This document shows positions 8,581-52,214 of a stretch of 64,000 nucleotides of DNA, in pieces. The notes beneath the pieces are model-generated. The model ran no database searches. It had not been told where the DNA came from and saw nothing but the letters and a program-made list of their open reading frames with translations. Every line of letters starts with the position of its first letter. The first letter of the stretch is position 1. The translations under genes and the position numbers were made by a program. The DNA is taken from the NCBI RefSeq assembly GCF_006345805.1, contig NC_043023.1:992001-1056000 (forward strand), given 5' to 3'. This DNA comes from Octopus sinensis (Eukaryota).

Positions 8581-8941
8581 TAAGGTTACCGGCTCCTTGT
8601 TACGGGTATGAACCTCTTTTACAAGGGTGGCTGATGTCAGGTACAAGATTGCATCATGTAGGGCCTTGGGCGGTTATGGTGGAGGGGAGGGGCAGAGGGG
8701 GAAGACAACCTGGGCTGAGAAAGGATGAGCAAACAGGGAGTGGTGGGGAGGAAGGATTAACAATGCACAAACAAGCGATCTATTGTGTTATCCGAGATGT
8801 AAACATTACATAACTGCAACAACACTAACAGCAACAACATGAGACAAAACAAGGAATACCTCTAGGTGGACACTTGCTATGCTAGAAATAGCAGCCAAAT
8901 CTCCCATAAATCACAGCCTAAAGTCTTATGTATGTATATAT

Positions 8942-9330
8942 GCGCAGGAGTGGCTGTGTGGTAAGTAGCTTGCTTACCAACCACATGGTTCCGGGTTCAG
9001 TCCCACTGCGTGGCATCATGGGCAAGTGTCTTCTGCTATAGCCCCGGGCCGACCAATGCCTTGTGAGTGGATTTGGTAGACGGAAACTGAAAGAAGCCTG
9101 TCATATATATGTATATATATACTATATATGTGTGTGTGTGTTTGTCCCCCTAGCATTGCTTGACAACCGATGCTGGTGTGTTTACGTCCCCGTCACTTAG
9201 CGGTTGGGCAAAAAGAGACCGATAGAATAAGTACTGGGCTTACAAAGAATAAGTCCCGGGATCGATTTGCTCGACTAAAGGCGGTGCTCCAGCATGGCCG
9301 GAGTCAAATGACTGAAACAAGTAAAAGAGT
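8942..9330 (+). mobile_element. SINE family A, full length
   Basis: Near-consensus copy. Confidence 0.93.
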
Positions 9331-9446
9331 ATGTATGTATGAGCCAACGAGGGAGGCATCTAAATGGTAGCTGGCACTGTTAGAAATAACAGCCAAATCT
9401 CCATCAAATCCCATCCTACTGTCTTGTGTATGTATGAGGCAATGTA

Positions 9447-9629
9447 GGTGCAGGTGTGACTGTGTGGCAAGAAGCTTGCTTCCCAACCCACATGGTTCAG
9501 GGTTCAATCCCAATTTGGTCCCTTGGGCAAGTGTCTTCTACTATAGCCTCAGGCCGACCAAAGCCTTGTGACTACTGGATTTGGTAGACGGAAACTGAAA
9601 GAAGCTCATCATATATATTATATATATTT

Positions 9630-9660
<31 letters not shown>

Positions 9661-10300
9661 CACACTTTGAATAATATATATCCCTCTATACTCAATCATA
9701 CAAACCCCTTTTTTATTTATATATATATATATATTTGTGTGTCAGTGTTTGTCTCCCCCCTCCCATGTTGACAACCAATGCTGGTGTGTTTATGTCCCTG
9801 TAACTTAGTGGTTCAGCAAAAGAGACCGATTGAATAAGTACTAGGCTTACAAAGAATAAGTCCTGGAGTCGATTTCTTCGACTAACACCCTTTGAGGTGG
9901 GACTCCAGCCTGGTCACAGTCAAATGACTGAAACAAGTAAAAGAATAAAAGAATATGTATGTATGAGCCAATGAGAGTGATTAAGAAGAAAAAGAATGTG
10001 TAGTGGCTGTGTGGTAAGAAGCTTGCTTCCCAACCATATGGTTCTGGGTTCAGTCCCACTGGGAAAGTGTCTCCTACTATAGTCTCTGGATGACCAAAGT
10101 CTTGTGATTGGATTTGGTAAACCGAAACTGAAAGAAGCCCACCATATATATAATATATGTATTTGTGTGTCTGTGTTTGTCCCCCACCACCATCGCTTGA
10201 CAACCGATGTTGGTGTGTTTATGCCCCAGTAACTTAGCGGTTTGGCACAAAAGACCGATAGACTAAGTACTAGGCTTACAAAGAATAAGTCCTTGGGTCA
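9447..10300 (+). mobile_element. two diverged SINE family A copies
   Basis: Heads at ~9447 and ~10001, with bodies and tails recognisable. Confidence 0.85.
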
Positions 10301-13752: not shown

Positions 13753-13789
13753 TTTTTAAAATTAAGTGAAACAAATCTCTCTTTCTCTT

Positions 13790-23084: not shown

Positions 23085-24590
23085 ATTGGTGGAAGCGGTG
23101 GTGGTGTTGGTGGTAGTAGTGATGGTGGTGGTGTTGGTAGTGATGTTGGTGGTGTTGGTGTTGATAGTGGTGGTGATGTTGGTGGTAGTAGTGTTGGTGA
23201 TGGTGTTGGGGGGGGGGTAGTGTTAGTGATGATGATAATGAGGGTGTTGATGTTGGTGGTGGTGGTGATGTTGGTGGTAGTAGTGATGGTGGTGGTGTTG
23301 GTGGTAGTAGTGTTGGTGATGGTGTTGGGGTGTTGGTGGTAGTAGTGCTGGTGATGGTGTTATGGTGGTGGTGGTGGTGGTGATGTTGGTGGTAGTGATG
23401 GTAGTAGTGCTGGTGATGGTGTTGGGGTGTTGGTGGTAGTAGTGCTGGTGATGGTGTTATGGTGGTGGTGGTGGTGATGTTGGTGGTAGTGATGGTAGTA
23501 GTGCTGGTGATGGTGTTGGGGTGGTGGTGGTGGTGGTGGTGGTGTGATGTTGGTGGTAGTGATGGTAGTAGTGCTGGTGATGGTGTTGGGGTGTTGGTGG
23601 TAGTAGTGCTGGTGATGGTGTTATGGTGGTGGTGGTGGTGGTGATGTTGGTGGTAGTGATGGTAGTAGTGCTGGTGATGGTGTTGGGGTGTTGGTGGTAG
23701 TAGTGTGGTGATGGTGTTGGGGTGTTGGTGGTAGTAGTGCTGGTGATGGTGTTATGGTGGTGTGGTGGTAGTGATGGTAGTAGTGCTGGTGATGGTGTTG
23801 GTGGTGTGGTGGTAGTGATGGTGTAGTGCTGGTGATGGTGTTATGGTGGTGGTGGTGGTGGTGATGTTGGTGGTAGTGATGGTAGTATGCTGGTGATGGT
23901 GTAGGGGTGGTGGTGGTGGTGGTGGTGTGATGTTGGTGGTAGTAGTGATGGTGGTGGTGTTGGTGGTAGTAGTGTTGGTGATGGTGTTGGGGTGTTGGTG
24001 GTAGTAGTGCTGGTGATGGTGTTATGGTGGTGGTGGTGGTGATGTTGGTGGTAGTGATGGTAGTAGTGCTGGTGATGGTGTTGGGGTGTTGGTGGTAGTA
24101 GTGCTGGTGATGGTGTTATGGTGGTGGTGGTGGTGGTGATGTTGGTGGTGTGGTGGTGATGTTGGTGGTAGTAGTGCTGGTGATGGTGTAGGGGTGGTGG
24201 TGGTGGTGGTGGTGATGTTGGTGATAGTGATGGTAGTAGTGCTGGTGATGGTGTTAGGTGGTGGTGGTGGTGATGTTGGTGGTAGTGATGGTAGTAGTGC
24301 TGGTGATGGTGTTGGGGTGGTGGTGTTGGTGGTAGTGATGGTAGTAGTGCTGGTGATGGTGTTGGGGTGGTGGTGTTGGTGGTAGTGATGGTAGTAGTGC
24401 TGGTGATGGTTTTGGGGTGGTGGTGTTGGTGGTGATGTTGGTGGTAGTAGTGCTGGTGATCGTGTTGGGGTGGTGGTATTGGTGGTAGTGGTGATGGTGT
24501 TGGGGGTAGTGTTGTTGTTGGTGGTGTTAGTGGTAGTGATGGAAGTAGTGTTCATGATGGTGTTGGGGTAGTGTTGGTGTTGGTGGTAGA
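23085..24590. repeat. G/T-rich triplet-derived minisatellite (gtgctggtgatggtgttggggtgttggtggtagta and variants)
   Basis: Direct reading; frames are broken by indels. Confidence 0.92.
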
Positions 24591-25167: not shown

Positions 25168-25791
25168 TAATAATAATAGAAAAAAAATATTGATAATAAT
25201 GGTAATATCAATAATGATATTGAAATAATTATGTTGAATCATGGAAAATTATCTGACTTAAGAATTTTAATGATAGTCTAATTTTGTGTCGACAAAATAG
25301 TCCATTCCATAAAGGCAATGAAGGGGGCGACCCTGTGTGTTTTTTAAATCATTATTCTATTTTTTATTTTAACAGCCCAAAAAGCACCTTCCCCCACCCG
25401 CTATCCTCTTGTAGAAGAATTCCGCAGTTTCATGCAAAGCAATTTCTTTTAAATTAAGACGCATTTAGATGACATGTGTTTCAGAACAATCCCTGATGAT
25501 CACCAACTAAAAGCTGTTGTGACAATGGGGGCGTGAAATCTGAAATCCCTGGTTTTTATTTAAGCATTTACCCTTTTTTTTCACAATTTTTTTTTCTATA
25601 TTTTGCAAAGGTGGGGACAGAGGGTTTGGGTTTTCTTGAGCAACTAGTAAATTGGAGTTACCATTAAAAAATTCTGATACATTGAACATTTATCTGAATT
25701 GAGGAATATTTAGATGACTTACAAGAATAATTCTTGTTAAAGAATTCAACTAAAAGCCATTTTAATAATGACTTGTGGCTTACTCTTTTAC

Positions 25792-26171
25792 TGGTTTCAG
25801 TCATTTGACTGCGGCCATGCTGGAGCACCGCCTTTAATCGAGCAACTCGACCCCGGGACTTATTCTTTTGTAAGCCCAGTACTTATTCTATTGGTCTCTT
25901 TTGCCGAACCACTAGGTTACAGGGGGCATAAACACACCAGCATCGGTTGTCAAGCGATGCTAGGGGGACAAACACAAACATAGACGCACACACACATATA
26001 CATATATACGACAGGCTTCTTTCAGTTTCCGTCTACCAAATCCACTCACAAGGCTTTGGTCGGCTCGAGGCTATAGTAGAAGACACTTGCCCAAGGTGCC
26101 ACACAGTGGGACTGAACCCGGAACCATGTGGTTGGTAAACAAGCTACTTACCACACAGCCACTCCTGCGCC
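25792..26171 (-). mobile_element. SINE family A, full length
   Basis: Near-consensus copy. Confidence 0.92.
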
Positions 26172-26376
26172 TGTATCTTTTTTGTTTTATCTTTCACTTG
26201 TCTCAGTCATTTGACTGTGGCCATGCTGGGGCATCACTTTAAAAAATTTAAGATGGATGAATCAATGAATCAATCCCAGTACTTATATCTTTAATTTTTT
26301 TAGTTTAATTTGCTGAACTGCTAAGTTACGGGAATGTAAACACACCGACCCGAATTTTCAAGTGGCTGTGAGAGAC

Positions 26377-26799
26377 AAATACCTATTTCTATATTGCCCA
26401 CAAGGGGCTAAACACAGAGGGGACAAACAAGGACAGACATAGGTATTAAGTCGATTACATTGACCCCAGTGCGTAACTGGTACTTAATCTATCGACCCCG
26501 AAAGGATGAAAGGCAAAGTCGACCTCGGCAGAATTTGAACTCAGAACATAACGGCAGATGAAATACCTATTTCTTTACTACCCACAAGGGGCTAAACATA
26601 GAGGGGACAAACAAGGACAGATATAGGTATTAAGTCGATACATCGACCCCAGTGCGTAACTGGTACTTAATTTATTGACCTCGAAAGGATGAAAGGCAAA
26701 GTCGACCTCGGCGGAATTTGAACTCACAATGTAACGGTAGACGAAATACTGCAAAGCATTTCGCCCGGCGTGCTAACGTTTCTGCCAGCTCGCCACCTT
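26377..26799 (-). mobile_element. SINE family B concatemer
   Basis: Same gaaata|ggtattt junction at ~26567 and ~26383. Confidence 0.88.
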
Positions 26800-32929: not shown

Positions 32930-33090
32930 TCTGTTTTCCATGCTGGCATGGGTTATGTGGTTTGACCAGAGCTGCCTCAAGTCCTTCGTCTATTTTGGCC
33001 TGGTTTCTACGGCTGGATACCCTTCCTAATGACAACCACCTTACAGAGTGGACTGGGTGCTTTTACATAGCACCAGCATCCCTGAGCTTG
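32930..33090 (-). mobile_element. decayed RTE 3' tail copy
   Basis: tttctacggctggatacccttcctaatgacaacc. Confidence 0.7.
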
Positions 33091-33109
33091 CAAAGTCAGA
33101 AACGTTCAT

Positions 33110-33870
33110 CCGGAGATACACCTGGTAGAAACAGCAGCCAAATCTCCCTCAAATCACACCCTACTGTCTTATGTATGTATATATGTGTGTATGAGACAAT
33201 GAGGGCAACCTTCACATGGTACCTAGACCTGGTAGAAATAGCAGCCAAATCTCCCTCAAATCACACCCTATTGTCTTATCTATGAGCCAACGAGGGAGAT
33301 CTCTACATGGTTGCTAGAGCTTGTAGAAATAGCAGCCAAATCTCCCTCAAATCACACCCTATTGTCTTATCTATGAGCCAACGAGGGAGATCTCTACATG
33401 GTTGCTAGAGCTTGTAGAAATAGCAGCCAAATCTCCCTCAAATCACACCCTACTCATTTATGAATGTATATATGTATGTATGAGCCAATGAGGGAGACCT
33501 CTACATGGTACCTAGAGCTGGTAGAAATAGCAGCCAAATCTCCCTCAAATCACACCCTGTCTTATGTATGTAGATATGTATGTATGAGCCAATGAGGGAG
33601 ACCTCTACATGGTTGCTAGAGCAGGTAGAAATAGCAGCCAAATCTCCCTCAAATCACACCCTGTCTTATGTATGTAGATATGTATGTATGAGCCAATGAG
33701 GGAGACCTCTACATGGTTGCTAGACCTGGTAGAAATAGCAGCTAAATCTCCCTCAAATCATACCCTACTGTCTTATATATATATATATGTAGGTATGAGT
33801 CAATGAGGGAGACCTCTACATGGTTGCTGGACCTGGTAGAAATAGCAGTCAAATCTCCCTCAAATCACAA
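33110..33870 (+). repeat. tandem array (8 units, 91-107 bp) of a structured repeat
   Basis: tgagggagacctctacatggttgctagacctggtagaaatagcagccaaatctccctcaaatcacacc with (TATG)n spacers. Confidence 0.92.
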
Positions 33871-34384
33871 GCCTGTATGCAAGGACAGCCATGCTTTTAC
33901 TTGGCTTGGCTTGTCTTCTCAGGCAGAGCAAACTGCTTAAAATCAAAAGAGATGAAACTCATAACAATATTCCTGTAACATAAACCACCTAAATTCAGTC
34001 ATTACTAATCCATATTAATCCAGTTTCCTCACTAATTAAACCAGGCTTAAGTGAATTACGTATTTCACCCTCTTTAGTTATTTCAATGAGTAATCCAGTT
34101 TAGTAACATGTTTTTAAAAGGGATTAAGGGGTTTTCATTATTCTTAGCAAACAAATACATAGGAGAACCATATGTTTGTATTAAACTTTTTATTTGTATC
34201 AGTCATTAGAATGTGGCCATGCTGGGGCACGGCCTTGAAAAGTTTTTTAGTTGAATCAATTGAGCATGTTTTTTTTTATGTCTGGTACTTATTTTATCAG
34301 TTGCTTTTGTTGAAATGCTAATTTACAGGGATGTAAGCAAACCAACAGTGGTTGTCAAGTAGTGGTGGGGGACAAACATACACA

Positions 34385-34750
34385 CACATGTAGAGGTCTC
34401 TCTCATTGACTCATACATACACATAGGTAAGACAGTATGCAGTGCGTTGAGGGAAATTTGGCTGCTATTTCTACCAGGTGTAGCTACCATGTAAAGGTCT
34501 CCTTCATCAGCACATACATACATACATACATACATACATACATACATACATAAGACAGTATGCAGTAATTTGAGGGAGATTTGGCTGCTATTCTTACCAG
34601 GTCCACGTACCATGTAGAGGTCTCCCTCATTGACTCATACATACATGTCTACATACATAAAACAGTAGGGTGCAATTTGAGGGAGATTTGGCTGCTATTT
34701 CTCCCAGGTGTATCTACCATGTAGAGGTCTCCCTCATTGGTTCATACATA
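34385..34750 (-). repeat. same structured repeat, about 3.5 units, opposite orientation
   Basis: tttgagggagatttggctgctatttctaccagg. Confidence 0.9.
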
Positions 34751-35103
34751 CAACATATTCACAACAACAACAAAAACATTTGCTGAGTCAGATATATTAA
34801 TTGAGATATTGTTAACATATCACCCGTCGCACTCCCCTCATCCTTGCTACTCTAATATATTGAAAAAAATGCTTTTAATTTATAGCAGTGCACCTGTTCC
34901 CTTTTTATTTTCCCTGCCCCTTCTTTGTAACAGGTCCTTTAGTTTAATAAGCCCATAATTATTTATCAAAAAACAGCCCTTTCACTCCCTTCTGTCACTC
35001 AATGCACTGTTCAACCCCTTATTTTCTTTTTTTTTCTGAGTCCTTTTTAAAAATGAAATATTAGTACAAATAATAAGGATAATAATAATGATAATAATAA
35101 TAA

Positions 35104-35532
35104 TCCTTTCTACTACAGGCACAAGGCCTGAAATTTTGGAAATGGGGGCTAGTTGATCCCAGTGTTCAACTGGTACTTATTTCATCAACCCTGAAGGGAT
35201 GAAAAGCAAAGTTGACCTCGGTGGAATTTGAACTCAGAACGTAGTGACAGACGAAATACTGCTAAGCATTTCACCTGGCATGCTAACGATTCTGCCAGCT
35301 TGCTCCCTTAATAATAATAATAATAATCCTTTCTACTACAGCCACAAGGACTGAATTTGGGGAAGGGGCTAAGTCAATTACATCGACCCCCAGTGTCTCA
35401 CTGGTATTTAATTTATCAACCCCGAAAAGATAAAATGCAAAGTTGACCTGGGTGGAATTTGAACACAGAATGTGAAGACAGATGAAAGCGTTTTGCTAGG
35501 CATGCTAACGACTCTGCCAGCTCATTGCCTTA
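35104..35532 (-). mobile_element. two head-to-tail SINE family B copies separated by (TAA)n
   Basis: Family B head, domain and tail. Confidence 0.85.
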
Positions 35533-35560
35533 ATAATAATAATGATAATAATAATAATAT

Positions 35561-36147
35561 ATTCACAGGCACAACAGTGCTGGGACCTATATGCATTAGA
35601 AGCTATGCCAACACTATGGAATAACAACAGAAAAAAGATATAGGCACATGCCAGAAAAGGTCACAGAAAACGAGAAAGCAACCATACTCTGGGATATGCC
35701 AATGCACACAAATAGAGAAATTAAGGACAATAGGCCAGATATAATTGTCAGAGATCATGAAGAAAAAAGTTGCTTTCTAATTGATGTATCAATACCAGCA
35801 GATGACAACGTTTCTCTGAAAGAAATAGAGAAACTTTCAAAATACAAAGACCTGGAAATAGAGGTAACTCCAATGTGGAATCTAAAAACAGAAACAATTC
35901 CTATCATAGTAGGCGCATTAGGTATGATAAAAAAATATTCAGATTAATACATAACAAAAACATCAGGACTTACAAATGCATATAACATACAGAAAATTGC
36001 ACTACTAGGCACTGCACACATCCTATGCAAAACACTTTTAATACAGTAACCATAAGAGCATCACAACAAACCACAGCACATACCTAAGGCACACAGAGCT
36101 GCACCCGTAGTGAAGTGAAAGCACGCTATAAAAATAAAACTACTGAA
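35561..36147 (+). mobile_element. 5'-truncated R4/Dong-like RLE retrotransposon in a (TAA)n tract
   Basis: RHNSAGTYMH*KLCQHYG..HMPEKV..ILWD..NRPDIIV..LIDVSIPADDN..KY.DLEIE..PIIVGALG..QKIALLGTAHIL; TAA repeats on both sides. Confidence 0.88.
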
Positions 36148-36174
36148 TAATAATAATAATAATAATAATAATCC

Positions 36175-36760
36175 TTTTTACTACAGGCACAAGGCCTGAA
36201 ATTTTTTGTGGGGAGTGATACTTATTTAATTGACCTTGAAAGGATGAAAAGCAGAATTGATTTTGGCGGAATTTGAACTCAGAATGCAGCAACAGACAAA
36301 ATACCACAAAATATTTCACCTGGCGTGAATAATAATAATAATAATAATAATGATTTCAAATTTTGACACAAGGCCACCAAGGTCAGAGGAAGGGGTTAAG
36401 TCAATTGCATTGAACCCAGTGCATAACTGGTACTTATTTTGGATGAAAGCAAAGTTGACCTCGGCAGAATTTGAACTCAGAACATAGAGACAGATGAAAT
36501 ACAAATGATTCTGTCAGCTTGATGCCATAATAATAATAATAATAAAATAATAATAATAATAATAATAATCCTTTCTACTATAGGCACAAGGCCAGAAATT
36601 TTGGGGGAGGGCTCCAGTCGATTCAATCGACTCCAGTATGCAACTAGTACTTAATTTATCAACCCCAAAAGGATGAAAGGCAAAAATCAACCTTGGCAGA
36701 ATTTGTACTCAAAGTGTAGAGACAGATGAAATACAAATAATTCTACTAGCTTGCCACCTT
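36175..36760 (-). mobile_element. three decayed SINE family B copies separated by (TAA)n
   Basis: Family B domain repeated. Confidence 0.8.
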
Positions 36761-37131
36761 ACTACTACTACTACTACTACCACCACCACCACCACCACCA
36801 CCACCACCACTACTACTACTACCACTATTACTACTACTACTACTGCTACTACTACTACTAATAATAATAATGATGATGATGATGATGATTTCTTTTATTT
36901 GCCACCAGAGTGAAGGATGAGGGGGAGAATAGAAAGACAGACATAAAGTGTTAGGGTTTACATATAATGGAATGATAAAATGAAAAGGTATACTTGGAAT
37001 ACATTAGAAGGGAAGTAAACATGGTCTATGACACTAGAAAAAGAGGTGGGGGAATATAGTGAAGGACCTCTAGGGATAATCAAGGAACCCTACCATCCAA
37101 GATCATCCTGAATTATAATAATAATGATAAT

Positions 37132-37647
37132 GGACTTGACAGAGAAAAAAAATTGGTATGACCATAAACCCGAAGGCATCATCGAAAATGATAATGCAAA
37201 GATCCTATGGGATTTTATGATTGATTCAGTGCGACCATGAGATAGAGAATAGGGAGCCAGACATAGTCTTAATTGAGAAAGAAACCAAACTCTGCTGGAT
37301 CATAGGTATAGCATGCCCAGCTGACAACAAGGTATGCGATAAGGTAGAAAGGAAAGTCGAGAGATATGACAGGTTAGCTTGGGAGGTTAAGCAGTTGTGG
37401 TCAATGAAAAAGGTGGTAGTAGTACCAATAATTTTTGGAACTCTGGGAACAGTGGGTGAAAATCTTGAGAAGTACATGGAAGAAATAGGGGCTGTAATAA
37501 GGGTGGAGCACTTGCAGAAAACAGCACTGCTTGGAACCACTCGAATACTCTGGAAGGTGCTCGAAAACTAAGGGGTGTTACCTTAGTTCACTGGTGATGA
37601 ACAGCTGACACTGTCATACATCTCCAGCATTAGAAGCTGTGCAAAGC
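37132..37647 (+). mobile_element. second, divergent R4/Dong-like RLE fragment in a (TAA)n tract
   Basis: WYDHKPEGIIENDNAKILWDF, a frameshift, then REPDIVLIEK..IGIACPAD..YDRLAWEVKQLW..VPIIFGTLG..QKTALLGTTRIL. Confidence 0.88.
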
Positions 37648-37659
37648 AATAATAATAAT

Positions 37660-37869
37660 GATTTCAAATTTTTGCCACAAGGGTAGATTGGGGGAGAGGA
37701 TTAAGTCAATTACATCGATTCCAGAGCATAACTGGTACTTATTTAATCGACCTTGAAAGGATGAAAAGCAAAGTTGACCTCGGTGGAATTTGAACTCAAA
37801 ACATAGCGGCAGATGAAATACTGCTAAGCATTTCACCCAGTGTGCTAATGATTCTGCCAGCTCACTGCC

Positions 37870-37931
<62 letters not shown>

Positions 37932-38188
37932 GATGATGATGATGATGATGATAATAATAATGATAATGATGATGATGATTTCAAATTTTTGCCACAAGGG
38001 CAGCTTGGGGGAAGTGGGGGATGAGTTGATTACACTGACCCCAGTGTTCAAATGGTACTTATTTTATTGTGACCCCAAAAGGATGAAAGTCAACCTCAGC
38101 AGAATTTGAACTCAGAACATAATGACAGGCAAAATACTGCTAAGCATTACACCCAGAACGCTAACGATTCTGCCAGCTCGTCACCTTA
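37660..38188 (-). mobile_element. two SINE family B copies separated by (TAA/TGA)n
   Basis: Family B head and domain. Confidence 0.85.
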
Positions 38189-38604
38189 ATAATAATAATA
38201 TTAATCATAATAATCCTTCCTGCTATATGCATATGGTATATGATTAAAAATGTTCCAGTTATGACCATCCCATCTTGTATTCAGTAATAGTGTATCTAGG
38301 ACTACATTATCTAATGTACTGTACAGTAAATAGTATTAGTGGCTATAGTTCTTTTGTAGTTGTTTTTTAGCCCCAGGTCAGTTGATCCAGTTGACCTATG
38401 ATCAAAGATGTTTTAACAGTGACCATCCCATCTTTTACTCAGATATAGTCTATCTTGGACTAGTTATCTAATGTGTAAGCTTACTAGTTAAATGAAAACT
38501 ATACTGACCCCTGTTCCACCCTTTTCCCCCCTCTATTCTACTCTGAATCAACACCCTTTTTATCTTAATAACACCTCATCTCATTTCTGAATCAACAAAG
38601 GATC

Positions 38605-38822
38605 CCACCACCACCACCACCACCCCACCACCACCGCCACCCCCACCACCCCCAACCACCCCCCACCACCACCGCCACCATCACCACCACCACCGCCGCC
38701 GCCGCCGCCGCCACCGTCGCTGCCGCCGTCGCTGCCGCCGCCGCCGCTGCCGCCGCCGCCGCCGCCACCACCACCACCACCACCACCACCACCACCACCG
38801 CCACCATCACCACCATCACCCA
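38605..38822. repeat. (CCA)n/(GCC)n triplet repeat
   Basis: Direct reading. Confidence 0.95.
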
Positions 38823-39129
38823 GGGTTTGTTCAACCCTTCTCCACTAACCCCTGCTGCTCCCTTCCTTGCTCTTATTATCTGGGGTGTGAGGCTAGGGGA
38901 TTTCTTTAAGCCTAACCTGCTTGTAATCATCACACCAATTAACATTCCACTGCTAGTCACTGTCCAATCATACTAATTAGATGACGTGTCACTAATCACA
39001 AAAATATAATTACACCTGTAGGGTGTGTGGGAATGATTCCATGCCTGGATTTTGCATTGTGTGTCTCTGAGGGAAGCAAGCTCTAAGACCAGTGAGGAGG
39101 TGGTTAATACATACATGTTGGCTTATAAA

Positions 39130-40240
39130 TTCACTCATACATATACATACATAAGACAGTAGGGTGTGATTTGAGGGAGATCTGGCTGCTATTTCTACCA
39201 GGTCAAGCTACCATTTACAGGTCTCCCTCATTGGCTCATACATACATATATACATACATAAGACAGTAGGGTGTGATTTGAGGGAGATCTGGCTGCTATT
39301 TCTACCAGGTCAAGCTACCATTTACAGGTCTCCCTCATTGGCTCATACATACATATATACATACATAAGACAGTAGGGTGTGATTTGAGGGAGATTTGGC
39401 TGCTATTTCTACAAGATCAAGCTACCATATACAGGTCTCCCTCAAAATGTGGAGTAGATAAAACAGGGGACAACATTATTTATATTATTATATGATCGAA
39501 TGCCACGCATCCATTTCCAAGTAAGTTTTATCATACATATATATACATACATATATAAGACAAAAGGTGTGATTTGAGGGGGATTTGGCTGCTATTTCTA
39601 CAAGATCAAGCTACCATATACAGGTCTCCCTCAAAATGTGGAGTAGATAAAACAGGGGACAACATTATTTATATTATTATATGATCGAATGCCACGCATC
39701 CATTTCCAAGTAAGTTTTATCATACATATATATACATACATATATAAGACAAAAGGTGTGATTTGAGGGGGATTTGGCTGCTATTTCTACCAGGTTTAGC
39801 TACCATGAAGAGGTTTCCCTCTCTGCCTCATACACACACACATATACATAAGACAGTGGGGTGTGATTTGAGGGAAATCCAGCTGCTATTTCTACCAGGT
39901 CTAGCTACCATGTAGAGGTCTCCCTCATTGACTCATACATACATATATACATACAATAAGACAGTAGGGTGTAATTTGAGGGTAATCTAGCTGCTATTTC
40001 TAATAGGTCAAGCTACCATGTAGAGGTCTCCCTCAATGTCTCATACATACATACATATATAACATAAGGGTGTGATTTAAGGGTAATCCAGTTACTATTT
40101 CTAACAGGTCAAGCTACCATGTAGAGGTCTCCCTCATTGCCTCATACATACATATATACATACATAAGGGTGTGATTTGAGGGAAATCCAGCTGCTATTT
40201 CTAACAGGTCTAGCTACCATGTAGAGGTCCCCCTTATTGT
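39130..40240 (-). repeat. structured ~100-bp repeat array (about 9 units) with a duplicated unique insert
   Basis: Same unit as 33110-33870; a further unit lies at ~40620-40760. Confidence 0.92.
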
Positions 40241-40245
40241 CTCAT

Positions 40246-40613
40246 AGCTTGCTAACCAACAACATGGTTCTGGGTTCAGTCCCACTGCGTAGCATTTTGA
40301 GCAAGTGTCTTCTGCTATAGCCTCGGGCTGACCAAAGCCTTGTGAGTGGATTTGGTAAATGGAAACTGAAAGAAGCCTGTCGTATATATGTATATATGTA
40401 TGTGTGTCTGTGTTTGTCCCCCCAACATCGCTTGACAACTGATGCTGGTGTGTTTACATCCCCATCACTTAGCGGTTTGGCAAAAGAGACCGACAGAATA
40501 AGTACTAGGCTTACAAAGAATAAGTCTTGTGGTCGATTTGCTCGACTAAAGGTGGTGCTCCAGCATGGCCGCAGTCAAATGACTGAAACAAGTAAAAGAG
40601 TAAAAGAGTAAGA
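40246..40613 (+). mobile_element. SINE family A
   Basis: 5'-clipped head, intact tail. Confidence 0.9.
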
Positions 40614-41575
40614 GTATATATACATACATAAGACAGTAGGGTGTGATTTGAGGGAAATCCAGCTGCTATTTCAAACAGGTCTTGCTACCATGTAGAGGTC
40701 TCCTTCATTGGCTCATACATACATATACACACACATAAGACAGTGGGCTGTGATTTGACTAAAAGCAGTGAGTTGAAGTTGGAGCATGGAAAGCTTTCAA
40801 CTTCTAAAGCCAGACTCTCTAGAAAGTTCCGAGCACCACCAGAAGTTGCTGTCATTGCTGTTGTTATCAGCAGTGTGTAGGAATAAGATGCCTTGGGGTA
40901 ATTGTTGTGGAACTTTATATTTTGGGTTCAACTCCCCCTGAGGTCAATTTTACTGGTCTTACCATTCCAGGGTAACTGACAGAATTCCAGTTATATATCT
41001 GTACATATAAATTTGATATGGGCAATTCTTTCTTGTCTTGGGATTCATGGTCAAATGTCTAGGTGGAATTGTGCGAAAAATTACACAGATGTGTAGAATG
41101 ATCCAGTGGTGATGCTGGGCTTTGTATTTTTCATAGCTCCCATGGTTACCGAGATAATCTACTATAATAATACTCATGTTTATGAATGAGAAAGGAAGGG
41201 GTGATAGATGAATAAGGAAGGAAGGGGTGATATCATAGTTGGTGGTGGGATGATGAAAATTGTACGCTGAAAAAATTAAATCAAACAGCATTTCAACTCT
41301 GTGTGAATATATGTGTGTGTGTGTGTGTGTGTGTGTATATAAAAGGGAGGTATGTAAATGTGTGTGTGTGTGCACGTATGTTTGTGCATGTGCAAAGGAA
41401 GTGGGATGGTTCATCTTTGTTCGCTTAGTATTTGGCATGGACAATGGACATTAAATGATTCTGAAGTTGATGTTGCTTTGGTTACTTCCTCTTAACTTAG
41501 CAGTTTGGCAAAAGGAACAGACAGAGTAAATATCAAACTTTAAAATTAAGTACAAGGAGGGATTTGTTCAAGTAT

Positions 41576-41960
41576 AGGCATAGGAGTGGCTGTGTGGTAA
41601 GTAGCTTGCTTACAAACTACATAGTTCAGGGTTCAGTCCCACTGCATGGCACCTTGGGCAAGTGTCTTCTACTATAGCCTTGGGCCGACCAAAGCCTTGT
41701 GAGTGGATTTGGTAGACGGAAACTGAAAGAAGCCCGTGGTATATATGTATATGTATATATGTATATGTATATATGTATGTATGTGTATATGTTTGTGTGT
41801 CTGTGTCTGTCCCCCAATGTCGCTTGACAACCAATGCTGGTATGTTTACGTCCCTATAACTTAGCGGTTCGGCAAAAGAGACCGATAGAATAAATACTAG
41901 TCCTGAGGTTGATTTGCTCCAGCATGGCCACAATCAAATGACTGAAACAAGTAAAAGAGT
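41576..41960 (+). mobile_element. SINE family A
   Basis: Head and tail recognisable. Confidence 0.9.
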
Positions 41961-42349
41961 AATGCTCAAAAACCAGCATGATCTAAGTTTCAACTGTAGC
42001 ATGTTACAACAACAAGACACACAACTGCAACAACAACAACAACGAAATGCCTGACCCCCATGGCTGAAATACAACAACAAGCCTGATGCATCAACAACAA
42101 AGTAGCAACAAAACATTGACAGCAAACACAACAGAAACATAATCTGTTGATTCCAGTAAATAAAGCGAACAACCCCACCTCATCCTGTTCTTCATTGTAC
42201 CACCCTAGTTTTGTAACAACAAACTGCCCACTTTTACACTCCCTTCTCCTGCTCTTCTTTGTCTAGTCTGAATTGACTCCTTAAACCCTTTTATCTTGAT
42301 GACACTTCATTCCATTTTGAAATTAACAAAGGCATTTAACCCCTGCCCA

Positions 42350-42812
42350 CTTCATCACCATCAACAAGAACAACTCCATGATCATCAATGGCAACATAGC
42401 AACACCACCACCACCATCATTGCCTTCACCAACATCAGATCTACCATCATCATCACAATTATCATCTTCATCAACTTCAGCATTATCACCATTACCTTCA
42501 CCATCTACACCGCCACCATCATCATCATCTTCATCAACACTGTAAACCTCACCATCATCACCAACACCACAACCATCACTATCATCACCACCACCACCAC
42601 CACCATCAACACCACCCACAATCACCATCACCAATTCCATCAACACCACCACCATCAACATCTTCATCAACACTGTTAACATCACCATCATCACCACCAC
42701 CACCACCACCACCAACACCACCATTATCATCACCACCACCACCATCATCCACAATCATCATCACTACCACTATCATCATCACCACTACCACCACCATCAC
42801 TACCACCACCCA
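42350..42812. repeat. (CAT/CAC)n triplet repeat
   Basis: Direct reading. Confidence 0.92.
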
Positions 42813-43379
42813 GGGTCCATTCATCCCTTCCCATACAGTGGCCCTTTATTATTATTATTATTATTATTATCTTTTCATCTCCCCTGGCCACTCCCCCCCA
42901 CATGTGTATGTCTAGGTGATTTCATCATTGCTAATAATTACCATTTCCCCAACAAAGTCACTGTCCAGTCATACTAATTTGATGACGTAGCACTAATTAA
43001 AAAAATGAATAAAAACATAAAAGAATTCCATGTGGCAGATGGGTGCAAGAGGGGAAAGGGAGGCCCCTTCCTCTCCTAACTCTCTCCTCATTTCAATACC
43101 GTATGTGTGTTTGAGGGAGAGCGGGGGATAAATGACTAAGACCAGGGATAAGGGGACAGCTTTACCCACATTCCAAAGGATTCAGGGACCAGTTTAAGTC
43201 AGCATCACAGGTGGTTGGTGTTATTGATTTTGTTGTTGTTGCTGCAGCAGTGATTTCATAACCGCCACCTAGACGCTCCAACCATGACCACTTAGTCTTT
43301 TTTATAGATGCTGAAATGTCTTCTTTACTCCTGCTTATTTTTTTTTTTTTTGCTTTTTTGAAACAGCAAAATGTTATTT

Positions 43380-43560
43380 GAAGGAAATTTGGCTGCTATT
43401 TCTACCAGGTCTGACTACCATGCTGAAGTCTCCCTCATTGATTCATACACACATATATACATAAAGAAGACAGTAGAGTGTGATTTGAGGGAGATTTGGC
43501 TACTATTTCTACAAGGTCTATTTACCATTGCTGAAGTCTTCATTGACTCATACATACATA
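43380..43560 (-). repeat. two units of the structured repeat
   Basis: gatttggctgctatttctacc. Confidence 0.8.
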
Positions 43561-43589
43561 TATATATTAATAATAATAATAATAATAAT

Positions 43590-43969
43590 AATGGTTTGGG
43601 ATTTTGCCACAAGGGCAGCATTTTTGGGGGAGGGGATGAGTTGATTACATTGACCCAGTATTTAACTGGTACTTATTTTATTGCCCCTGAAAGGATGAAA
43701 GGAAAAGCTGACCTTGGTGGAATTTGAACCCAGAACGTAACCTTAATAGCAATAATAATAATAATAATAATAACAATAATAATAATAATAATAATAATGA
43801 TAATAATAATTCTTTTTAAAACACAAGGCCTGGAATTTGGGGCAGGGGCATCGACTCCAATATTGACTCTGGAAGAATGAAAGGCAAAGTTGACCTCAGT
43901 GGAATTTGAACTCAGAATGTGGCAGCAGATGAAATGCCCCATGTGCTAACAATTCTGCCAGCTCACTGG

Positions 43970-44022
<53 letters not shown>

Positions 44023-44288
44023 GGATGATAATAATAATAATGATGATGATAATATGTTTCTTTATTACACACAAGGGGCTAAACATAGAGGGGACAAACA
44101 AGGACAGACAAACGAATTAAGTCGATTATATCGACCCCAGTGCGTAACTGGTACTTAATTTATCGAACTCGAAAGGATGAAAAGCAAAGTCGACCTCAGC
44201 GGAATTTGAACTCAGAACGTAACAGCAGACGAAATACCGCTAAGCATTTCGCCCGGTGTGCTAACGATTCTGCCAGCTCGCTGCCTTA
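43590..44288 (-). mobile_element. three SINE family B copies (the last full length and near consensus) separated by (TAA)n
   Basis: Family B head, domain and tail. Confidence 0.88.
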
Positions 44289-44291
44289 AAG

Positions 44292-44492
44292 CAGTGCTTT
44301 TCAACATTTTTGCTGGAGCGGAACCCCAAGGAAGCATTCCACTGGCTCGAGGAACCCCTGTGCAATAATTTAATAGTCGTATGCACACATATCTGCACAG
44401 GAGAATTAAAAATTACTGTCGATTTTAACAGTTTTGTAACTTCTTGCAGAACCCCTGGACTGTACTGGTGGAACCCTGCTTGAAAACCACTG
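44292..44492. mobile_element. hAT (Charlie-like) MITE, 201 bp
   Basis: TIR cagtgcttttcaa / ttgaaaaccactg with 8-bp TSD ccttaaag / ccttaaaa. Confidence 0.88.
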
Positions 44493-44945
44493 CCTTAAAA
44501 TACCGTGTGTCTGAAGTCCTTGTTGGGACTTGACAAACAGTACAAACCCCCCCGTGGACACAATATCTTCAATAAACAACATCACAGTATTGGATACTGT
44601 ATGACGTCTATAATAATAATAATCCTTTGTACTATAGGCACAAAGTTATGTGTCAGAGTCGAGTTCGAATCACAGTTCAAGCTAGATGGTTCAAAGTCTT
44701 GCAGAGCTATCAGCGTTAGCACAATAGACGAAGGCGGGGTGTTACCATTCTGGTATAGAAGGGATAACCTGTATCTGATACCAAGAAAATATTGTGGTCA
44801 TTATAGATACAACAGTTACGGTTGCAACAATGGCTATGATGTGGGAAACACCACATCATAACCGAAAGTTGATTACACTGACCCCAGTATACAACTGGTA
44901 CTTATTTCATCAGGAAGGAAAGAAAGGAAGAAAGGTGAAGTCGTT

Positions 44946-45345
44946 CATCATCATCATCATCAATTAGCGTCCGCTTTCCATGCTAGCATGGGTTGGACGG
45001 TTCAACTGGGGTCTGGGAAACCAGAAGGCTGCACCAGGCCCAGTCTGATCTGGCAATGTTTCTACGGCTGGATGCCCTTTCTAATGCCAACCACTCAGTG
45101 AGTGTAGTGGGTGCTTTTTACGTTCCACCGGCACAGGTGCCAGATGAGGCTGGCAAATGGCCACGATCGGATGGTGCTTTTTATGTGCCACTGGCACGGG
45201 GGGCCAGGCGAGGCTGGCAATGGCCACGATCGGATGGTGCTTTTTATGTGCCACCAGCACGGAGGCCCATTGGTGCGGGGCTGGCAACGGCCATGTTCGG
45301 ATGGTTCGCTTATGTGCCACTGGCACTAGTATCACAGCTGCAATT
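44946..45345 (-). mobile_element. RTE 3' tail element with about 3 array units
   Basis: Homologous to 4640-4998. Confidence 0.85.
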
Positions 45346-45539
45346 TCCATTGGCGTTGATCGATTTCGATTCTTGGTGGGATTTATTCTCAGAATATAAA
45401 GATGGACAAAATGCCACAAAGCATTTTGTCTGGTGTGCTGACGATGCTGCCAGGTCATCACCTTAGTAACCCTTTCAACTTTAGGCACAAAGCCTGAAAT
45501 TTTTTAGGGGGAGAGGAGCCAGTCTATTACATCAAATTA

Positions 45540-45960
45540 TTTTTATCATCATCATTATCATCATCATCATTGCCACCAATATCATCCTCAGTATCATCTT
45601 TCTTTCGCTACCAGCATCATCACCATCACCATCATTGTCATCATCATCATGCTATCTACACCACCATCATCATCAGCGTTGTCATTAACATCATCATCAC
45701 CACCACCACCACCACCACCACCATCACCATCTACACCACCATCATCATCAGCATTGTCGTTAACATCATCACCACCACTATCACCATCATCATCATTGCC
45801 ACCACCACCATCATCATCATCAACATTGTCAACATCATCATCAGCAACAGCAGAACATTACAACAAACCTACACACACATACCATTACACTACTACTACT
45901 ACTGCTACTACTACTACTACTACTAATAATAATAATAATAATCATCATCATCATTATCGT
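45540..45960. repeat. (CAT/CAC/TAC/TAA)n triplet repeat
   Basis: Direct reading. Confidence 0.92.
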
Positions 45961-46110
45961 CTTCCCGAGAAGCAACATAGTCCCTGCCATACCCCCCTTC
46001 CCCTTCACATCACCCTCCTCCACCTGTCCCCTCAACAATTTCCTTACCCCTACCGCTCAACAAATGGATTTCTAATGTGTAGTGTACAACAGGGAGAGGT
46101 AGGGGGCTGA

Positions 46111-46202
46111 GGCAAATTAGCTTTAATTATGCAAATTAGCTGAGCTGACTGACAAAATTATGCAAATTAAACTCAGCTGACTCACTAATTGTTTGTGACT
46201 CA
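46111..46202. promoter_or_regulatory. candidate enhancer: two octamers and two AP-1 sites
   Basis: ATGCAAAT at 46129 and 46160; TGACTCA at 46178 and 46196. Confidence 0.4.
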
Positions 46203-46221
46203 AAACTAACAAGACAAGTGA

Positions 46222-46470
46222 GCAGCTAGATCTGGTAGAAATAGCACCCATATCTCCCTCAAATCACACCCTACTGTCTTATGTGTGTATGAGCCAATGA
46301 GGGAGACCTCTACATGGTAGCTAGACCTGGTAGAAATAGCAGCCAAATCTCCCTCAAATCGCAACCTACTGTTTTATGTATGTATATATATATATACGTA
46401 TGAGCCAATGAGAGAGACCTCTACATGGTAGCTAGATCTGGTAGAAAGAGCAGCCAAATCTCCATATGAG
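46222..46470 (+). repeat. three units of the structured repeat
   Basis: ctggtagaaatagcagccaaatctccctc. Confidence 0.88.
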
Positions 46471-46500
46471 GTCCAATTTTCTTATATTTACATGTACTCG

Positions 46501-47146
46501 TTTATTTGTTTCAGTCATTTGACTGTGGCCATGCTGGAGCAGCGCCTTTAGTCGAGCAAATCGACCCCAGGATTTATTCTTTGTAAGCCTAGTACTTATT
46601 CTATCAGTCTCTCTTGCCGAACCGCTAAGTTACAGGGATGTATACACACCAGCATTGGTTGTCAAGCGAAGTTGGGGGGGGGGGACAAACAGAGACACAC
46701 AAACATATACACACACATACATATATATATATATACATATATACGACAAGCTTCTTTCAGTTTCTGTCTACCAAATCCACTCACAAGGCCTCTGGGTTCA
46801 GTCCCACTGCATGGCACCTTGGTTAAGTGTCTTCTACTATAGCCTCAGACTGAGCTTTGTGAGTGGATTTGGTAGATGGAAACTGAAAGAAGCCCACCGT
46901 ATATATGTATATATATATATATATATATGTGTATGTGTATATGTTTGTGTGTCTGTGTTTGTCCCCCAACATTATTTGACAACCGATGTTGGTGAGTTTA
47001 CATCCCTGTAACTTAGTGGTTTGGCAAAAGAGACCGATAGAATGAGTACTAGGCTTACAAAGAATAAGTCCTGGGGTGGATTTGCTCAACTAAATGCAGT
47101 GCTCCAGCATGGCCACAGTCAAATGACTGAAACAAGTAAAAGAGAG
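46501..47146. mobile_element. head-to-head fused SINE A pair
   Basis: Minus copy 46501-46790 is joined directly to plus copy 46791-47146. Confidence 0.88.
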
Positions 47147-51430: not shown

Positions 51431-51800
51431 TGTGAATATTGATATATACACATTATACTACATTGACACACACACATACACACACACAAACATATTTGCG
51501 TTGGGTGTGGTGAGAGTGGTTGTTTTATATATATAAGTATGCATGTATGCACACAAATTCTCCGAGCATATGTACAACATTGAAAACCGCAGAATAAACA
51601 CTGTCACCACCGGCGCCACCACTAACACCACCATTACCAAAGAAGAAAACCATCGACGATACAAAGAACATTATCACCACAATTAACCGCAATCACACTC
51701 GTTAAAAAAACACACATGTCCATACATACATACATTTCCTATTTTCATTTAATTACACACACTATCTCTCTCTCCCTTTCTCTGTATCATCATTATATAC

Positions 51801-51964
51801 ATAGGAGTGGCTGTGTGGTAAGTAGTTTGCTAAACAACCACATGGTTCCGGGTTCAGTCCCACTGTGTGGCACCTTGGGCAAGTGTCTTCTACTATTGCC
51901 TTGGGCCGACCAAAGCCTTGTGAGTGGATTTGGTAGATGGAAACTGAAAGAAGCCCATCGTATA

Positions 51965-52002
<38 letters not shown>

Positions 52003-52204
52003 AGTGTATGTTTGTGTTTGTCCCCCTAGCATCGCTTGACAACCGATGCTGGTGTGTTTATGTCCCCGTCACTTAGCGGTTCGGCAAAAAGAGACCGATA
52101 GAATAAGTACTGGGCTTACAAAGAATAAGTCCCGGGGTCGAGTTGCTCGATTAAAGGAGGTGCTCCAGCATGGCCGCAGTCAAATGACTGAAACAAGTAA
52201 AAGA
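51801..52204 (+). mobile_element. SINE family A, full length
   Basis: Near-consensus copy. Confidence 0.92.
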
Positions 52205-52214
52205 GAAAAGAGAA

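What the first reader, a model, noticed from the sequence alone, without database searches (positions are those of the whole stretch)
33110..46470. About 28 copies of a ~100-bp unit with a nested double stem and possible pseudoknot, arrayed in both orientations
Unit: TGAGGGAGA-cctctacat-GGTTGCTA-gacctggtagaaa-TAGCAGCC-aaa-TCTCCCTCA-aatcacaccctactgtct plus a variable (TATG)n spacer. The outer 9-bp stem is perfect, the inner 8-bp stem uses a G-U pair, and tctac in the junction could pair with gtaga in the loop. Arrays: 8870 and 9345 (single, +), 33110-33870 (8, +), 34385-34750 (~3.5, -), 39130-40240 and 40620 (10, -), 43380 (2, -), 46222 (3, +). Tandem structured monomers resemble satellite or retrozyme-type RNAs, though I find no hammerhead, twister or HDV core. 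Opposed arrays 500 bp apart (33.1-34.8 kb) would also form long dsRNA, a potential ADAR substrate.
Basis: partly seen in the sequence, partly recalled or inferred. Interest (0 to 1): 0.7.

Follow-up and report, generated by a model that had tools for sequence, protein, structure and literature searches.

The report
Octopus tandem repeat, not structured RNA
The ~100-bp unit is a real, locally amplified tandem DNA repeat in an octopus-type genome, but its hairpin shows no sign of being maintained as an RNA structure or ribozyme, so it is best read as ordinary satellite-like DNA.

Summary
The repeat is real. A profile search finds 30 copies (about 24 near-full, 6 partial) at the stated places and orientations. 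Each is an ~85-bp core plus a variable (TATG)n spacer.

The window is octopus-like DNA. A LINE fragment is closest to Octopus vulgaris and O. bimaculoides proteins, and the window's commonest SINE is 87% identical to a copy on an O. vulgaris chromosome.

The "nested double stem" describes one array, not the family:
- The outer 9-bp stem is intact in 12 of 26 units, the inner stem in 5 of 26 (all in the 33-kb array), and both in 3 of 26.
- Most units read GGTAGCTA, which puts an A·A mismatch in the inner stem.
- Covariation does not stand out from shuffled controls, and RNAalifold drops both stems.
- Folding energies are unremarkable (z -0.6 to -1.7).
- Substitutions hit stems and loops alike (p = 0.23).
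- Rfam finds no ribozyme, and neither strand contains CUGANGA.

The arrays grew as DNA. Neighbouring units are near-identical, and a 189-bp higher-order repeat carries a 106-bp foreign insert in two identical copies. Two arrays share a duplicated flank, and SINEs sit in the spacers.

The opposed arrays at 33.1-34.8 kb could form imperfect dsRNA if co-transcribed; this is untested. Verdict: an ordinary satellite-like repeat of low interest, apparently undescribed.

The parts
8848..8927 (+). Most diverged unit (about 27% from its nearest relative); the first unit of a small array later split by a SINE
   Evidence: nhmmer 58 bits; distances
9341..9425 (+). Second unit of the 8.8-9.4 kb mini-array. 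It is followed by the start of a third unit (9433-9443), which is interrupted by a second SINE
33113..33871 (+). Array of 7 full units plus one degenerate 5' unit. It is the only array carrying the GGTTGCTA variant that completes the inner stem
34387..34742 (-). Array of 3 full units and one partial unit in the opposite orientation. The partial unit is cut off at unit position 26 by a 5'-truncated SINE (34188-34396)
39153..40243 (-). Largest array, 9 units. It includes two identical neighbours (39153 and 39260) and a 189-bp higher-order repeat
39445..39550 (-). 106-bp foreign insert that replaces the start of a unit. A second copy at 39634-39739 is 100% identical, and the sequence occurs nowhere else in the window. 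It marks a recent 189-bp tandem duplication at the DNA level
40245..40602 (+). 5'-truncated SINE, antisense to the units, inserted between the units at 40162 and 40630
40630..40758 (-). One full unit plus the 3' end of another (unit positions 64-85); the upstream edge of the - array
43361..43549 (-). Two diverged units (17% apart from each other)
46222..46482 (+). 2.6 units, abutted on the right by two SINE copies (46495-46789 on -, 46791-47144 on +)
8935..9334 (+). Full-length SINE sitting exactly in the (TATG)n spacer between two units
9442..9947 (+). SINE inserted in the start of a unit. It is flanked by a ~16-bp direct duplication of the unit start (gtatgtatgaggcaatg ... tatgtatgagccaatgag), i.e. 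a target-site duplication
   Evidence: read directly
38700..39014 (-). Flank downstream of the 39-kb array, running into a (TGG)n tract. It is homologous (about 70%, with a 51-bp core at 88%) to 42700-43017 downstream of the 43-kb array, which indicates an old segmental duplication of array plus flank

Best explanation
This is a lineage-specific, satellite-like tandem DNA repeat in an octopus-type genome. The monomer is an ~85-bp core followed by a (TATG)n microsatellite.

Shown:
- The arrays grow and shrink at the DNA level by tandem duplication, that is unequal exchange or replication slippage, in blocks of one or two units.
- At least one array was copied together with its flank by segmental duplication.
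- The arrays are being broken up by SINE retroposition.

Inferred:
- The microsatellite spacers act as the recombination or slippage register.
- The changes of orientation arose by local inversion or inverted duplication.
- The 9-bp inverted repeat in the monomer is an ancestral sequence feature that decays with unit age. It is not a selected RNA fold.
- Any RNA role, such as dsRNA from the opposed arrays, would be a by-product of the arrangement.
For: - Head-to-tail arrays with periods of 91-107 bp, every junction lying in a (TATG)n tract of variable length.
- Neighbouring units are each other's closest relatives: 39153/39260 at 0% divergence, 33482/33586 at 3.7%, 39367/39559 at 3.6% and 33284/33375 at 4.7%. 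Mean distances are 10-18% within arrays and 14-32% between them.
- A 189-bp higher-order repeat carries a 106-bp non-unit insert in two 100% identical copies found nowhere else in the window. Only DNA-level duplication produces that.
- Array edges are degenerate and start at arbitrary unit phases (positions 1, 27, 61-64), and the arrays share no common termini.
- The 39-kb and 43-kb arrays share a homologous downstream flank that runs into a (TGG)n tract.
- SINEs lie inside or against arrays in 5 places, one with a ~16-bp TSD made of unit sequence, so the units were there before the SINEs.
- There is no signal of a maintained structure.
- There is no known RNA family.
- Octopus origin: 76% and 73% identity to O. 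vulgaris and O. bimaculoides proteins; SINE 87% identical to O. vulgaris OX597824.1.
Against: - A perfect 9-bp inverted repeat in an 86-nt core is uncommon by chance (0.8% of shuffles). The outer stem is somewhat better kept than the rest of the unit (minor-allele fraction 0.073 against 0.126 in all unpaired columns), so a weak constraint cannot be excluded.
- The sample is 26 related units from one 64-kb window, so the power to detect covariation is limited.
- The origin of the monomer is unknown.
- Genome-wide abundance, transcription and chromosomal distribution could not be examined, because no cephalopod genome can be searched at the DNA level with these tools.
- The mechanism behind the orientation flips was not demonstrated.
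Confidence: 0.8

Rival explanations
1. The arrays are the central tandem repeats of a non-autonomous mobile element: a Helentron-type HINE or a tandem-repeat-containing MITE of the pearl/DTC84 kind known in bivalve molluscs. On this view transposition, not local rearrangement, scattered short arrays in both orientations.
For: Short arrays of 2-11 units lie in both orientations, separated by sequence that is unique within the window. They are associated with microsatellites and the monomer contains a palindrome. These are features of Cg_HINE and DTC84 (PMC7492417; PMC3879986). Two weak unit-like hits in an unrelated 20-kb O. vulgaris locus (15.3 and 11.7 bits) hint at dispersed old copies.
Against: The arrays share no 50-100-bp left or right flank. 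Sensitive all-against-all BLAST of 400-600-bp flanks finds only SINEs and one pair of flanks related by segmental duplication. The arrays begin and end at different unit phases. The microsatellite lies between every pair of units rather than at one end of the array. All copies sit within 13 kb, plus one site 24 kb away, which looks local rather than dispersed.
Confidence: 0.1
2. The monomer is a LINE 3'-tail mimic: a hairpin, a short linker and a (TATG)n tail, as in stringent-type LINE/SINE partners such as eel UnaL2/UnaSINE1 (recalled from my own knowledge). It would be copied by target-primed reverse transcription into its own microsatellite tail, so that arrays grow by repeated self-targeted retroposition.
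For: The anatomy fits: stem-loop, 19-nt linker and microsatellite. The same spacers are demonstrably used as retroposition targets by the resident SINE, with a ~16-bp TSD. Many units are about equally close to near-consensus units (33690, 46291, 39153), a star-like pattern.
Against: The higher-order repeat with a foreign insert, and the identical neighbouring units, show DNA-level duplication. The window contains no solo unit flanked by a TSD. None of the LINE fragments in the window ends in the unit. The hairpin is not conserved among copies.
Confidence: 0.05
3. The unit encodes a functional structured RNA, either a satellite or retrozyme-type self-processing RNA or a hairpin precursor of small RNAs, and the double stem with pseudoknot is its active fold.
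For: The 9-bp inverted repeat is rarer than chance (0.8%). The minority variant folds into the nested double hairpin at -28 kcal/mol. 86% of the proposed pair cells are standard pairs, against 35-47% when partners are slid by 1-3 columns; that excess is expected anyway when a structure is derived from the consensus.
Against: - There is no ribozyme or other Rfam family, even at E<=1, and no CUGANGA on either strand.
- Covariation does not stand out from shuffles, and RNAalifold drops both stems.
- z-scores are -0.55 to -1.7.
- Stems and loops mutate alike.
- Both stems are intact in only 3 of 26 units, and diverged units carry uncompensated mismatches and a deletion in the stem.
- The best-conserved stretch (columns 42-54) runs from the terminal loop (GTAGAAA) into the 3' arm of the inner stem.
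Confidence: 0.03

Closest known systems
Classical satellite or minisatellite-like tandem repeats that evolve by unequal exchange, with higher-order repeats and degenerate array edges
   Same: Head-to-tail monomers of about 100 bp. Neighbours are homogenised, a higher-order repeat is present and the array edges are degenerate. The sequence is non-coding, AT-rich and contains an internal short inverted repeat.
   Different: Only short arrays (2-11 units) are seen, interspersed with sequence that is unique within the window and with SINEs. Every monomer is separated by an expandable (TATG)n microsatellite. Genome abundance and chromosomal location are unknown.
Cg_HINE (Helentron non-autonomous elements carrying satDNA-like central repeats) in Crassostrea gigas, PMC7492417
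   Same: A mollusc genome, short satDNA-like arrays in both orientations, and association with 4-nt microsatellites and palindromes.
   Different: Here there are no conserved left or right flanks, no subTIRs and no 3' palindrome next to the arrays. The microsatellite lies between all monomers, not in a left flank.
DTC84 / pearl tandem-repeat-containing MITEs (Donax trunculus, Crassostrea virginica), PMC3879986
   Same: [quoted passage not shown]
   Different: DTC84 has flanking cassettes with short inverted repeats, an AA target-site duplication and a fixed order of repeat variants. None of these was found here.
Neighbouring inverted repeats as ADAR hyper-editing substrates (Alu pairs in primates; repeats in octopus), PMC5625713
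   Same: Two opposed arrays about 0.5 kb apart with arms up to 191 nt at 86-88% complementarity.
   Different: The duplex is imperfect and shifts register because spacer lengths differ. Transcription and editing of this locus are unknown.
Retrozymes and hammerhead-bearing satellite RNAs (Rfam hammerhead families; the comparison rests on my own knowledge of the class)
   Same: Tandem monomers of about 100 nt with an internal hairpin.
   Different: No hammerhead, twister, HDV, hairpin, pistol or hatchet match, and no CUGANGA box. No conserved fold.

Membership tests
Self-cleaving ribozyme / retrozyme-type satellite RNA | A recognisable catalytic core (hammerhead CUGANGA...GAAA, twister, HDV, etc.) | tested here: not met
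   Rfam 15 cmscan gives 0 hits at gathering score over the window. At E<=1 over 33000-46600 no ribozyme family appears. The consensus lacks CTGA on both strands (read).
Self-cleaving ribozyme / retrozyme-type satellite RNA | Unit-length linear or circular RNA products and self-cleavage | not testable with these tools
Conserved structured non-coding RNA | Base pairs maintained by compensatory change, with stems more constrained than loops | tested here: not met
   - The covariation score is reached by 34 of 500 shuffles, and 4 of 545 cells show a change on both sides.
- RNAalifold keeps neither stem.
- Minor-allele fraction is 0.084 in stems and 0.103 in unpaired columns, p = 0.23.
- Both stems are intact in 3 of 26 units.
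Conserved structured non-coding RNA | Folding energy clearly below that of shuffled sequence | tested here: not met
   z = -1.03 (majority variant), -0.55 (reverse strand) and -1.74 (minority variant).
Satellite / tandem-repeat DNA | Head-to-tail arrays of a defined monomer | tested here: met
   TRF periods of 91-107 bp with up to 5 copies per row; 30 nhmmer hits grouped into 7 clusters.
Satellite / tandem-repeat DNA | Local homogenisation and higher-order repeats, indicating unequal exchange | tested here: met
   Adjacent units differ by 0-5%. A 189-bp higher-order repeat carries a duplicated 106-bp insert at 100% identity.
Satellite / tandem-repeat DNA | High genomic copy number, long arrays, heterochromatic or centromeric location | not testable with these tools
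   No cephalopod genome can be searched at the DNA level. One 20-kb O. vulgaris locus gave only 2 weak hits. Exact-pattern scans of metagenome and viral contigs gave 0 hits.
Helentron HINE / tandem-repeat-containing MITE (Cg_HINE, DTC84, pearl) | Conserved left and right flanking modules (subTIRs, inverted repeat, 3' palindrome) around the array | tested here: not met
   BLAST of all array flanks against each other and against the window finds only SINEs, one LINE-tail fragment and one flank pair related by segmental duplication. The sample is only about 6 arrays.
Helentron HINE / tandem-repeat-containing MITE (Cg_HINE, DTC84, pearl) | Microsatellite at one end of the array only, and a defined target (TT or AA) | tested here: not met
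   (TATG)n separates every pair of units. Array ends fall at different unit phases.
SINE / LINE-tail retroposon | Dispersed solo copies flanked by target-site duplications, with a 3' tail shared with a partner LINE | tested here: not met
   The window has no solo unit outside the arrays above 8.6 bits. The LINE fragments in the window do not end in the unit. ARAGORN finds no tRNA-like gene.
ADAR hyper-editing substrate (inverted repeat pair) | Two inverted copies close enough to pair within one transcript and form a long duplex | tested here: met
   Arms 33363-33553 and 34565-34755 are 191 nt at 86% complementarity, and arms 33681-33868 and 34565-34752 are 188 nt at 88%. The MFE has 325 inter-array pairs.
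ADAR hyper-editing substrate (inverted repeat pair) | Co-transcription and clustered A-to-G mismatches in RNA reads | not testable with these tools
   No RNA-seq access.

The most novel reading that the evidence does not exclude
The monomer (hairpin, 19-nt linker, (TATG)n) is a 'headless' retroposon module that mimics the 3' tail of a stringent-type LINE. It would be reverse-transcribed into its own microsatellite tail, so that a satellite is seeded and extended by repeated self-targeted retroposition and only afterwards reshaped by unequal exchange. The SINE insertions with TSDs in the same spacers would then be a sign that these spacers are preferred nick sites for the same LINE machinery.
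Probability: 0.05. Interest if true: 0.6.

Novelty: new member of a known kind. Interest (0 to 1): 0.15.

Why it matters
It matters little beyond repeat annotation. If catalogued, the unit would add one family to the unclassified repeat fraction of octopus genomes. A recent O. vulgaris re-annotation puts repeats at about 66% of the genome, part of it 'unknown repeats' (PMC13282606). I found no cephalopod satellite DNA study in the held library.

The locus is a tidy example of a monomer-plus-microsatellite repeat in which the microsatellite could serve both as the register for tandem duplication and as a landing pad for SINEs. The opposed arrays are a plausible but generic dsRNA source in an animal with very high hyper-editing (PMC5625713).

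Tried and rejected
- Rfam at gathering score and at E<=1: no ribozyme or other credible family.
- ARAGORN: no tRNA-like gene.
- Exact-pattern scans for the unit in JGI metagenome contigs (two patterns) and IMG/VR: 0 hits. These collections probably hold no octopus DNA, so this says little.
- To find outside copies through spurious gene calls, I searched a concatenation of the unit's open translation frames against the 5.8-billion protein set: no candidates.
- Exact look-up of two LINE ORFs from the window: not on record.
- I harvested octopus DNA through LINE homologues. Only one useful locus came back, L001, 20 kb of O. vulgaris OX597824.1. L002 and L003 are short contigs, and P0115 is not on record. 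The second LINE query returned no octopus entries.
- L001 gave two weak unit-like hits only.
- Full-text search for unit and SINE k-mers: 0 papers. Searches for cephalopod satellite DNA found nothing specific.
- I looked for common array termini (the mobile-element reading): none.
- I considered derivation of the unit from the resident SINE. nhmmer with the unit profile hits none of the roughly 30 SINE copies; only a short, unconvincing GATTTGG-type resemblance is visible by eye.
- I considered that the 34-kb and 39-kb - arrays are one array split by a 4.4-kb insertion. The breakpoints do overlap in unit phase (TATGTATGAGCCAATG on both sides). The intervening DNA, however, is a mosaic with no LINE ORF, and no empty site is available, so this is left as an inference.

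Full report
**What is there**

The window is eukaryotic DNA, AT-rich (29-49% GC per 2 kb) and saturated with microsatellites and short interspersed repeats. A search with the unit consensus, and then with a profile built from aligned units, finds 30 copies.

| Position | Strand | Units |
|---|---|---|
| 8848-8927 and 9341-9425 | + | 2 |
| 33113-33871 | + | 7 full, 1 degenerate |
| 34387-34742 | - | 3 full, 1 partial |
| 39153-40243 | - | 9 |
| 40630-40758 | - | 1 full, 1 partial |
| 43361-43549 | - | 2 |
| 46222-46482 | + | 2.6 |

Full units score 58-93 bits. The best hit in shuffled windows scores 5.1 bits. Each unit is an ~85-bp core followed by a (TATG)n-type tract of variable length, which gives periods of 91-107 bp.

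**Where it comes from**

A LINE C-terminal ORF in the window (3793-4281) has as its only named close relatives proteins of Octopus vulgaris (76% identity) and O. bimaculoides (73%). The window's commonest repeat is a ~400-bp SINE. It has a head I read as tRNA-like (ARAGORN calls no tRNA gene), an internal microsatellite and the tail ...GACTGAAACAAGTAAAAGAG. It is 87% identical over 395 bp to a copy on O. vulgaris chromosome OX597824.1. The window is therefore from an octopus or a close relative; the species was not determined.

**Is the hairpin a maintained structure?**

- 86% of pair cells are standard pairs, but shuffling the 3' partners gives 86.0 ± 0.4%, and 96 of 500 shuffles do as well.
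- The covariation score is reached by 34 of 500 shuffles, and only 4 of 545 cells carry a change on both sides.
- Pair 30-52 of the inner stem is unpaired in 20 of 25 distinct units.
- The outer stem is intact in 12 of 26 units, the inner stem in 5 of 26 and both in 3 of 26.
- RNAalifold keeps neither stem in its consensus.
- Single-sequence folds have z-scores of -1.03 (majority variant), -0.55 (reverse strand) and -1.74 (minority variant).
- In the majority variant the 'pseudoknot' pairing tctac/gtaga is simply the nested inner helix.
- Within the hairpin, the minor-allele fraction is 0.084 in stem columns and 0.103 in unpaired columns (permutation p = 0.23).
- The best-conserved stretch (columns 42-54) runs from the terminal loop into the 3' arm of the inner stem.
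- Diverged units carry uncompensated mismatches and even a 3-nt deletion in the outer stem.

The one point in favour is that a perfect inverted repeat of 9 bp or more occurs in only 0.8% of dinucleotide shuffles of the core. The inverted repeat is probably an original feature of the monomer, but it is decaying rather than being maintained.

**Known RNA families**

Rfam 15 gives no hit at gathering score anywhere in the window. At E<=1 over 33000-46600 there are only weak miRNA- and snoRNA-model hits, at least some of them on microsatellite tracts (for example 34515-34551 on (ACAT)n), and no ribozyme family. Neither strand of the consensus contains the hammerhead CUGANGA box (read).

**How the arrays grew**

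- Adjacent units are each other's nearest relatives: 39153/39260 are identical, 33482/33586 differ by 3.7%, 39367/39559 by 3.6% and 33284/33375 by 4.7%.
- Between 39343 and 39821 the period is 189 bp. Here a 106-bp non-unit sequence replaces the start of a unit, and the composite block was then duplicated. The two inserts (39445-39550 and 39634-39739) are 100% identical and occur nowhere else in the window. This is a recent duplication at the DNA level.
- Array edges are degenerate and fall at different unit phases.
- The arrays have no common flanks, with one exception. The sequence downstream of the 39-kb and 43-kb arrays is homologous over several hundred bp and runs into a (TGG)n tract (38700-39014 against 42700-43017, about 70% identity, with a 51-bp core at 88%). 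That indicates an old segmental duplication of array plus flank.
- Sequence between the arrays is largely unique within the window.

**SINEs in the arrays**

The SINE covers about 10 kb (16%) of the window. It lies inside or against the arrays in five places.

- 8935-9334 sits exactly in a spacer.
- 9442-9947 is flanked by a ~16-bp duplication of the unit start, so the unit was there first.
- 34188-34396 truncates a unit at position 26.
- 40245-40602 splits the large array.
- 46495-47144 (two copies) abuts the last array.

Many other SINE copies also end next to TA-rich microsatellites, so this looks like a general target preference.

**The opposed arrays**

Arrays 33113-33871 (+) and 34387-34742 (-) are inverted repeats with arms up to 191 nt at 86-88% complementarity. 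The minimum-energy fold of the 1637-nt stretch has 325 inter-array pairs, with perfect helices of at most 30 bp. If both arrays lie in one transcript, they would form the kind of imperfect long dsRNA that ADARs hyper-edit. In the metazoan survey of Porath et al., octopus has the strongest hyper-editing signal, and most substrates are neighbouring inverted repeats (PMC5625713). This is a generic property of inverted repeats, and I could not test transcription or editing.

**Copies elsewhere**

I could not search a cephalopod genome at the DNA level.

- Exact-pattern scans of metagenome and viral contigs gave nothing.
- A protein-space search with the unit's open frames gave nothing.
- The one 20-kb O. 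vulgaris locus I could fetch has two weak unit-like hits (15.3 and 11.7 bits, about 70% identity over 50 nt). These are above the shuffle background and hint at old diverged relatives, no more.
- No paper in the held library prints the unit or describes cephalopod satellite DNA.

**Comparison with known systems**

The best fit is ordinary satellite- or minisatellite-type DNA. The closest described mollusc systems are short satDNA-like arrays carried by Helentron-type HINEs in oyster (PMC7492417) and tandem-repeat-containing MITEs such as DTC84 (PMC3879986). Their defining flanking modules, and a single microsatellite at one end of the array, are not found here, so I do not file the unit with them. 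With only about six arrays to judge from, that reading keeps about 10%.

A LINE-3'-tail-mimic reading (hairpin plus microsatellite tail, self-targeted retroposition) is anatomically attractive. It has no support in the window, and the higher-order repeat contradicts it as the main mechanism; I give it about 5%. The structured-RNA or retrozyme reading is down to about 3%.

**Verdict**

This is a real but ordinary repeat: a new, apparently undescribed member of a known kind. Interest is low (0.15).

Noticed in passing
window, about 30 copies, e.g. 7174-7593, 8935-9334, 25781-26176, 51794-52205, 63349-63754: A ~400-bp SINE with a head I read as tRNA-like, an internal (TA/TG)n microsatellite and the tail GACTGAAACAAGTAAAAGAG covers about 16% of the window. 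It is 87% identical to a copy in O. vulgaris OX597824.1. Many copies end next to TA-rich microsatellites, and five lie in or against the unit arrays.
   Followed up: partly
window 3745-5003; reversed copy at 44945-45326; fragments at 32988-33078, 61382-61456 and 61804-62123: A LINE C-terminal ORF (3745-4281) is followed by a 3' region made of 61-63-bp GC-rich tandem repeats (4244-4839; 45110-45326). A fragment of this element lies directly upstream of the 33-kb array, apparently by coincidence.
   Followed up: partly
window 5417-5995: A second LINE C-terminal ORF (192 aa). Its best relatives are ENA contigs at 59-64% identity and crustacean (Petrolisthes) reverse-transcriptase-like proteins at 41-43%. 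It is followed by a 340-bp (ATAC/TA)n tract at 6081-6422.
   Followed up: partly
window 38700-39014 and 42700-43017: An old (~70% identity) duplicated segment that includes a (TGG)n / (CCA)n tract next to two of the - arrays. The 43-kb copy has about 170-200 bp of extra sequence, starting with an A-rich stretch, between the array and the flank.
   Followed up: partly
window 23097-24587: A 1.5-kb degenerate (GGT)n tract with a superimposed 50-bp period. Similar GGT/GTA tracts occur at 8324-8470, and their complement at 38605-38820 and 42513-42810.
   Followed up: no
window 35079-35558, 36100-36700, 37600-38200, 43570-44290 and others: A second short interspersed family that carries (AAT)n tracts and the motif ...CGACCCCAGTG..AACTGGTACTTA.., with a dozen or more copies in the window.
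   Followed up: no
window 13784-14028, 15737-16028, 19191-19544, 22239-22478, 26373-26749: Several young two- to three-copy tandem duplications with periods of 75-183 bp at 90-98% identity, at least one of them (13784-14028) inside a SINE copy. Local tandem duplication seems to be common in this genome region, not special to the unit.
   Followed up: no
L001 2184-2232 and 19312-19358 (O. vulgaris OX597824.1): Two weak matches to unit positions about 21-72 (15.3 and 11.7 bits). One lies next to a (TA)n tract. They may be ancient solo relatives of the unit in O. vulgaris.
   Followed up: partly
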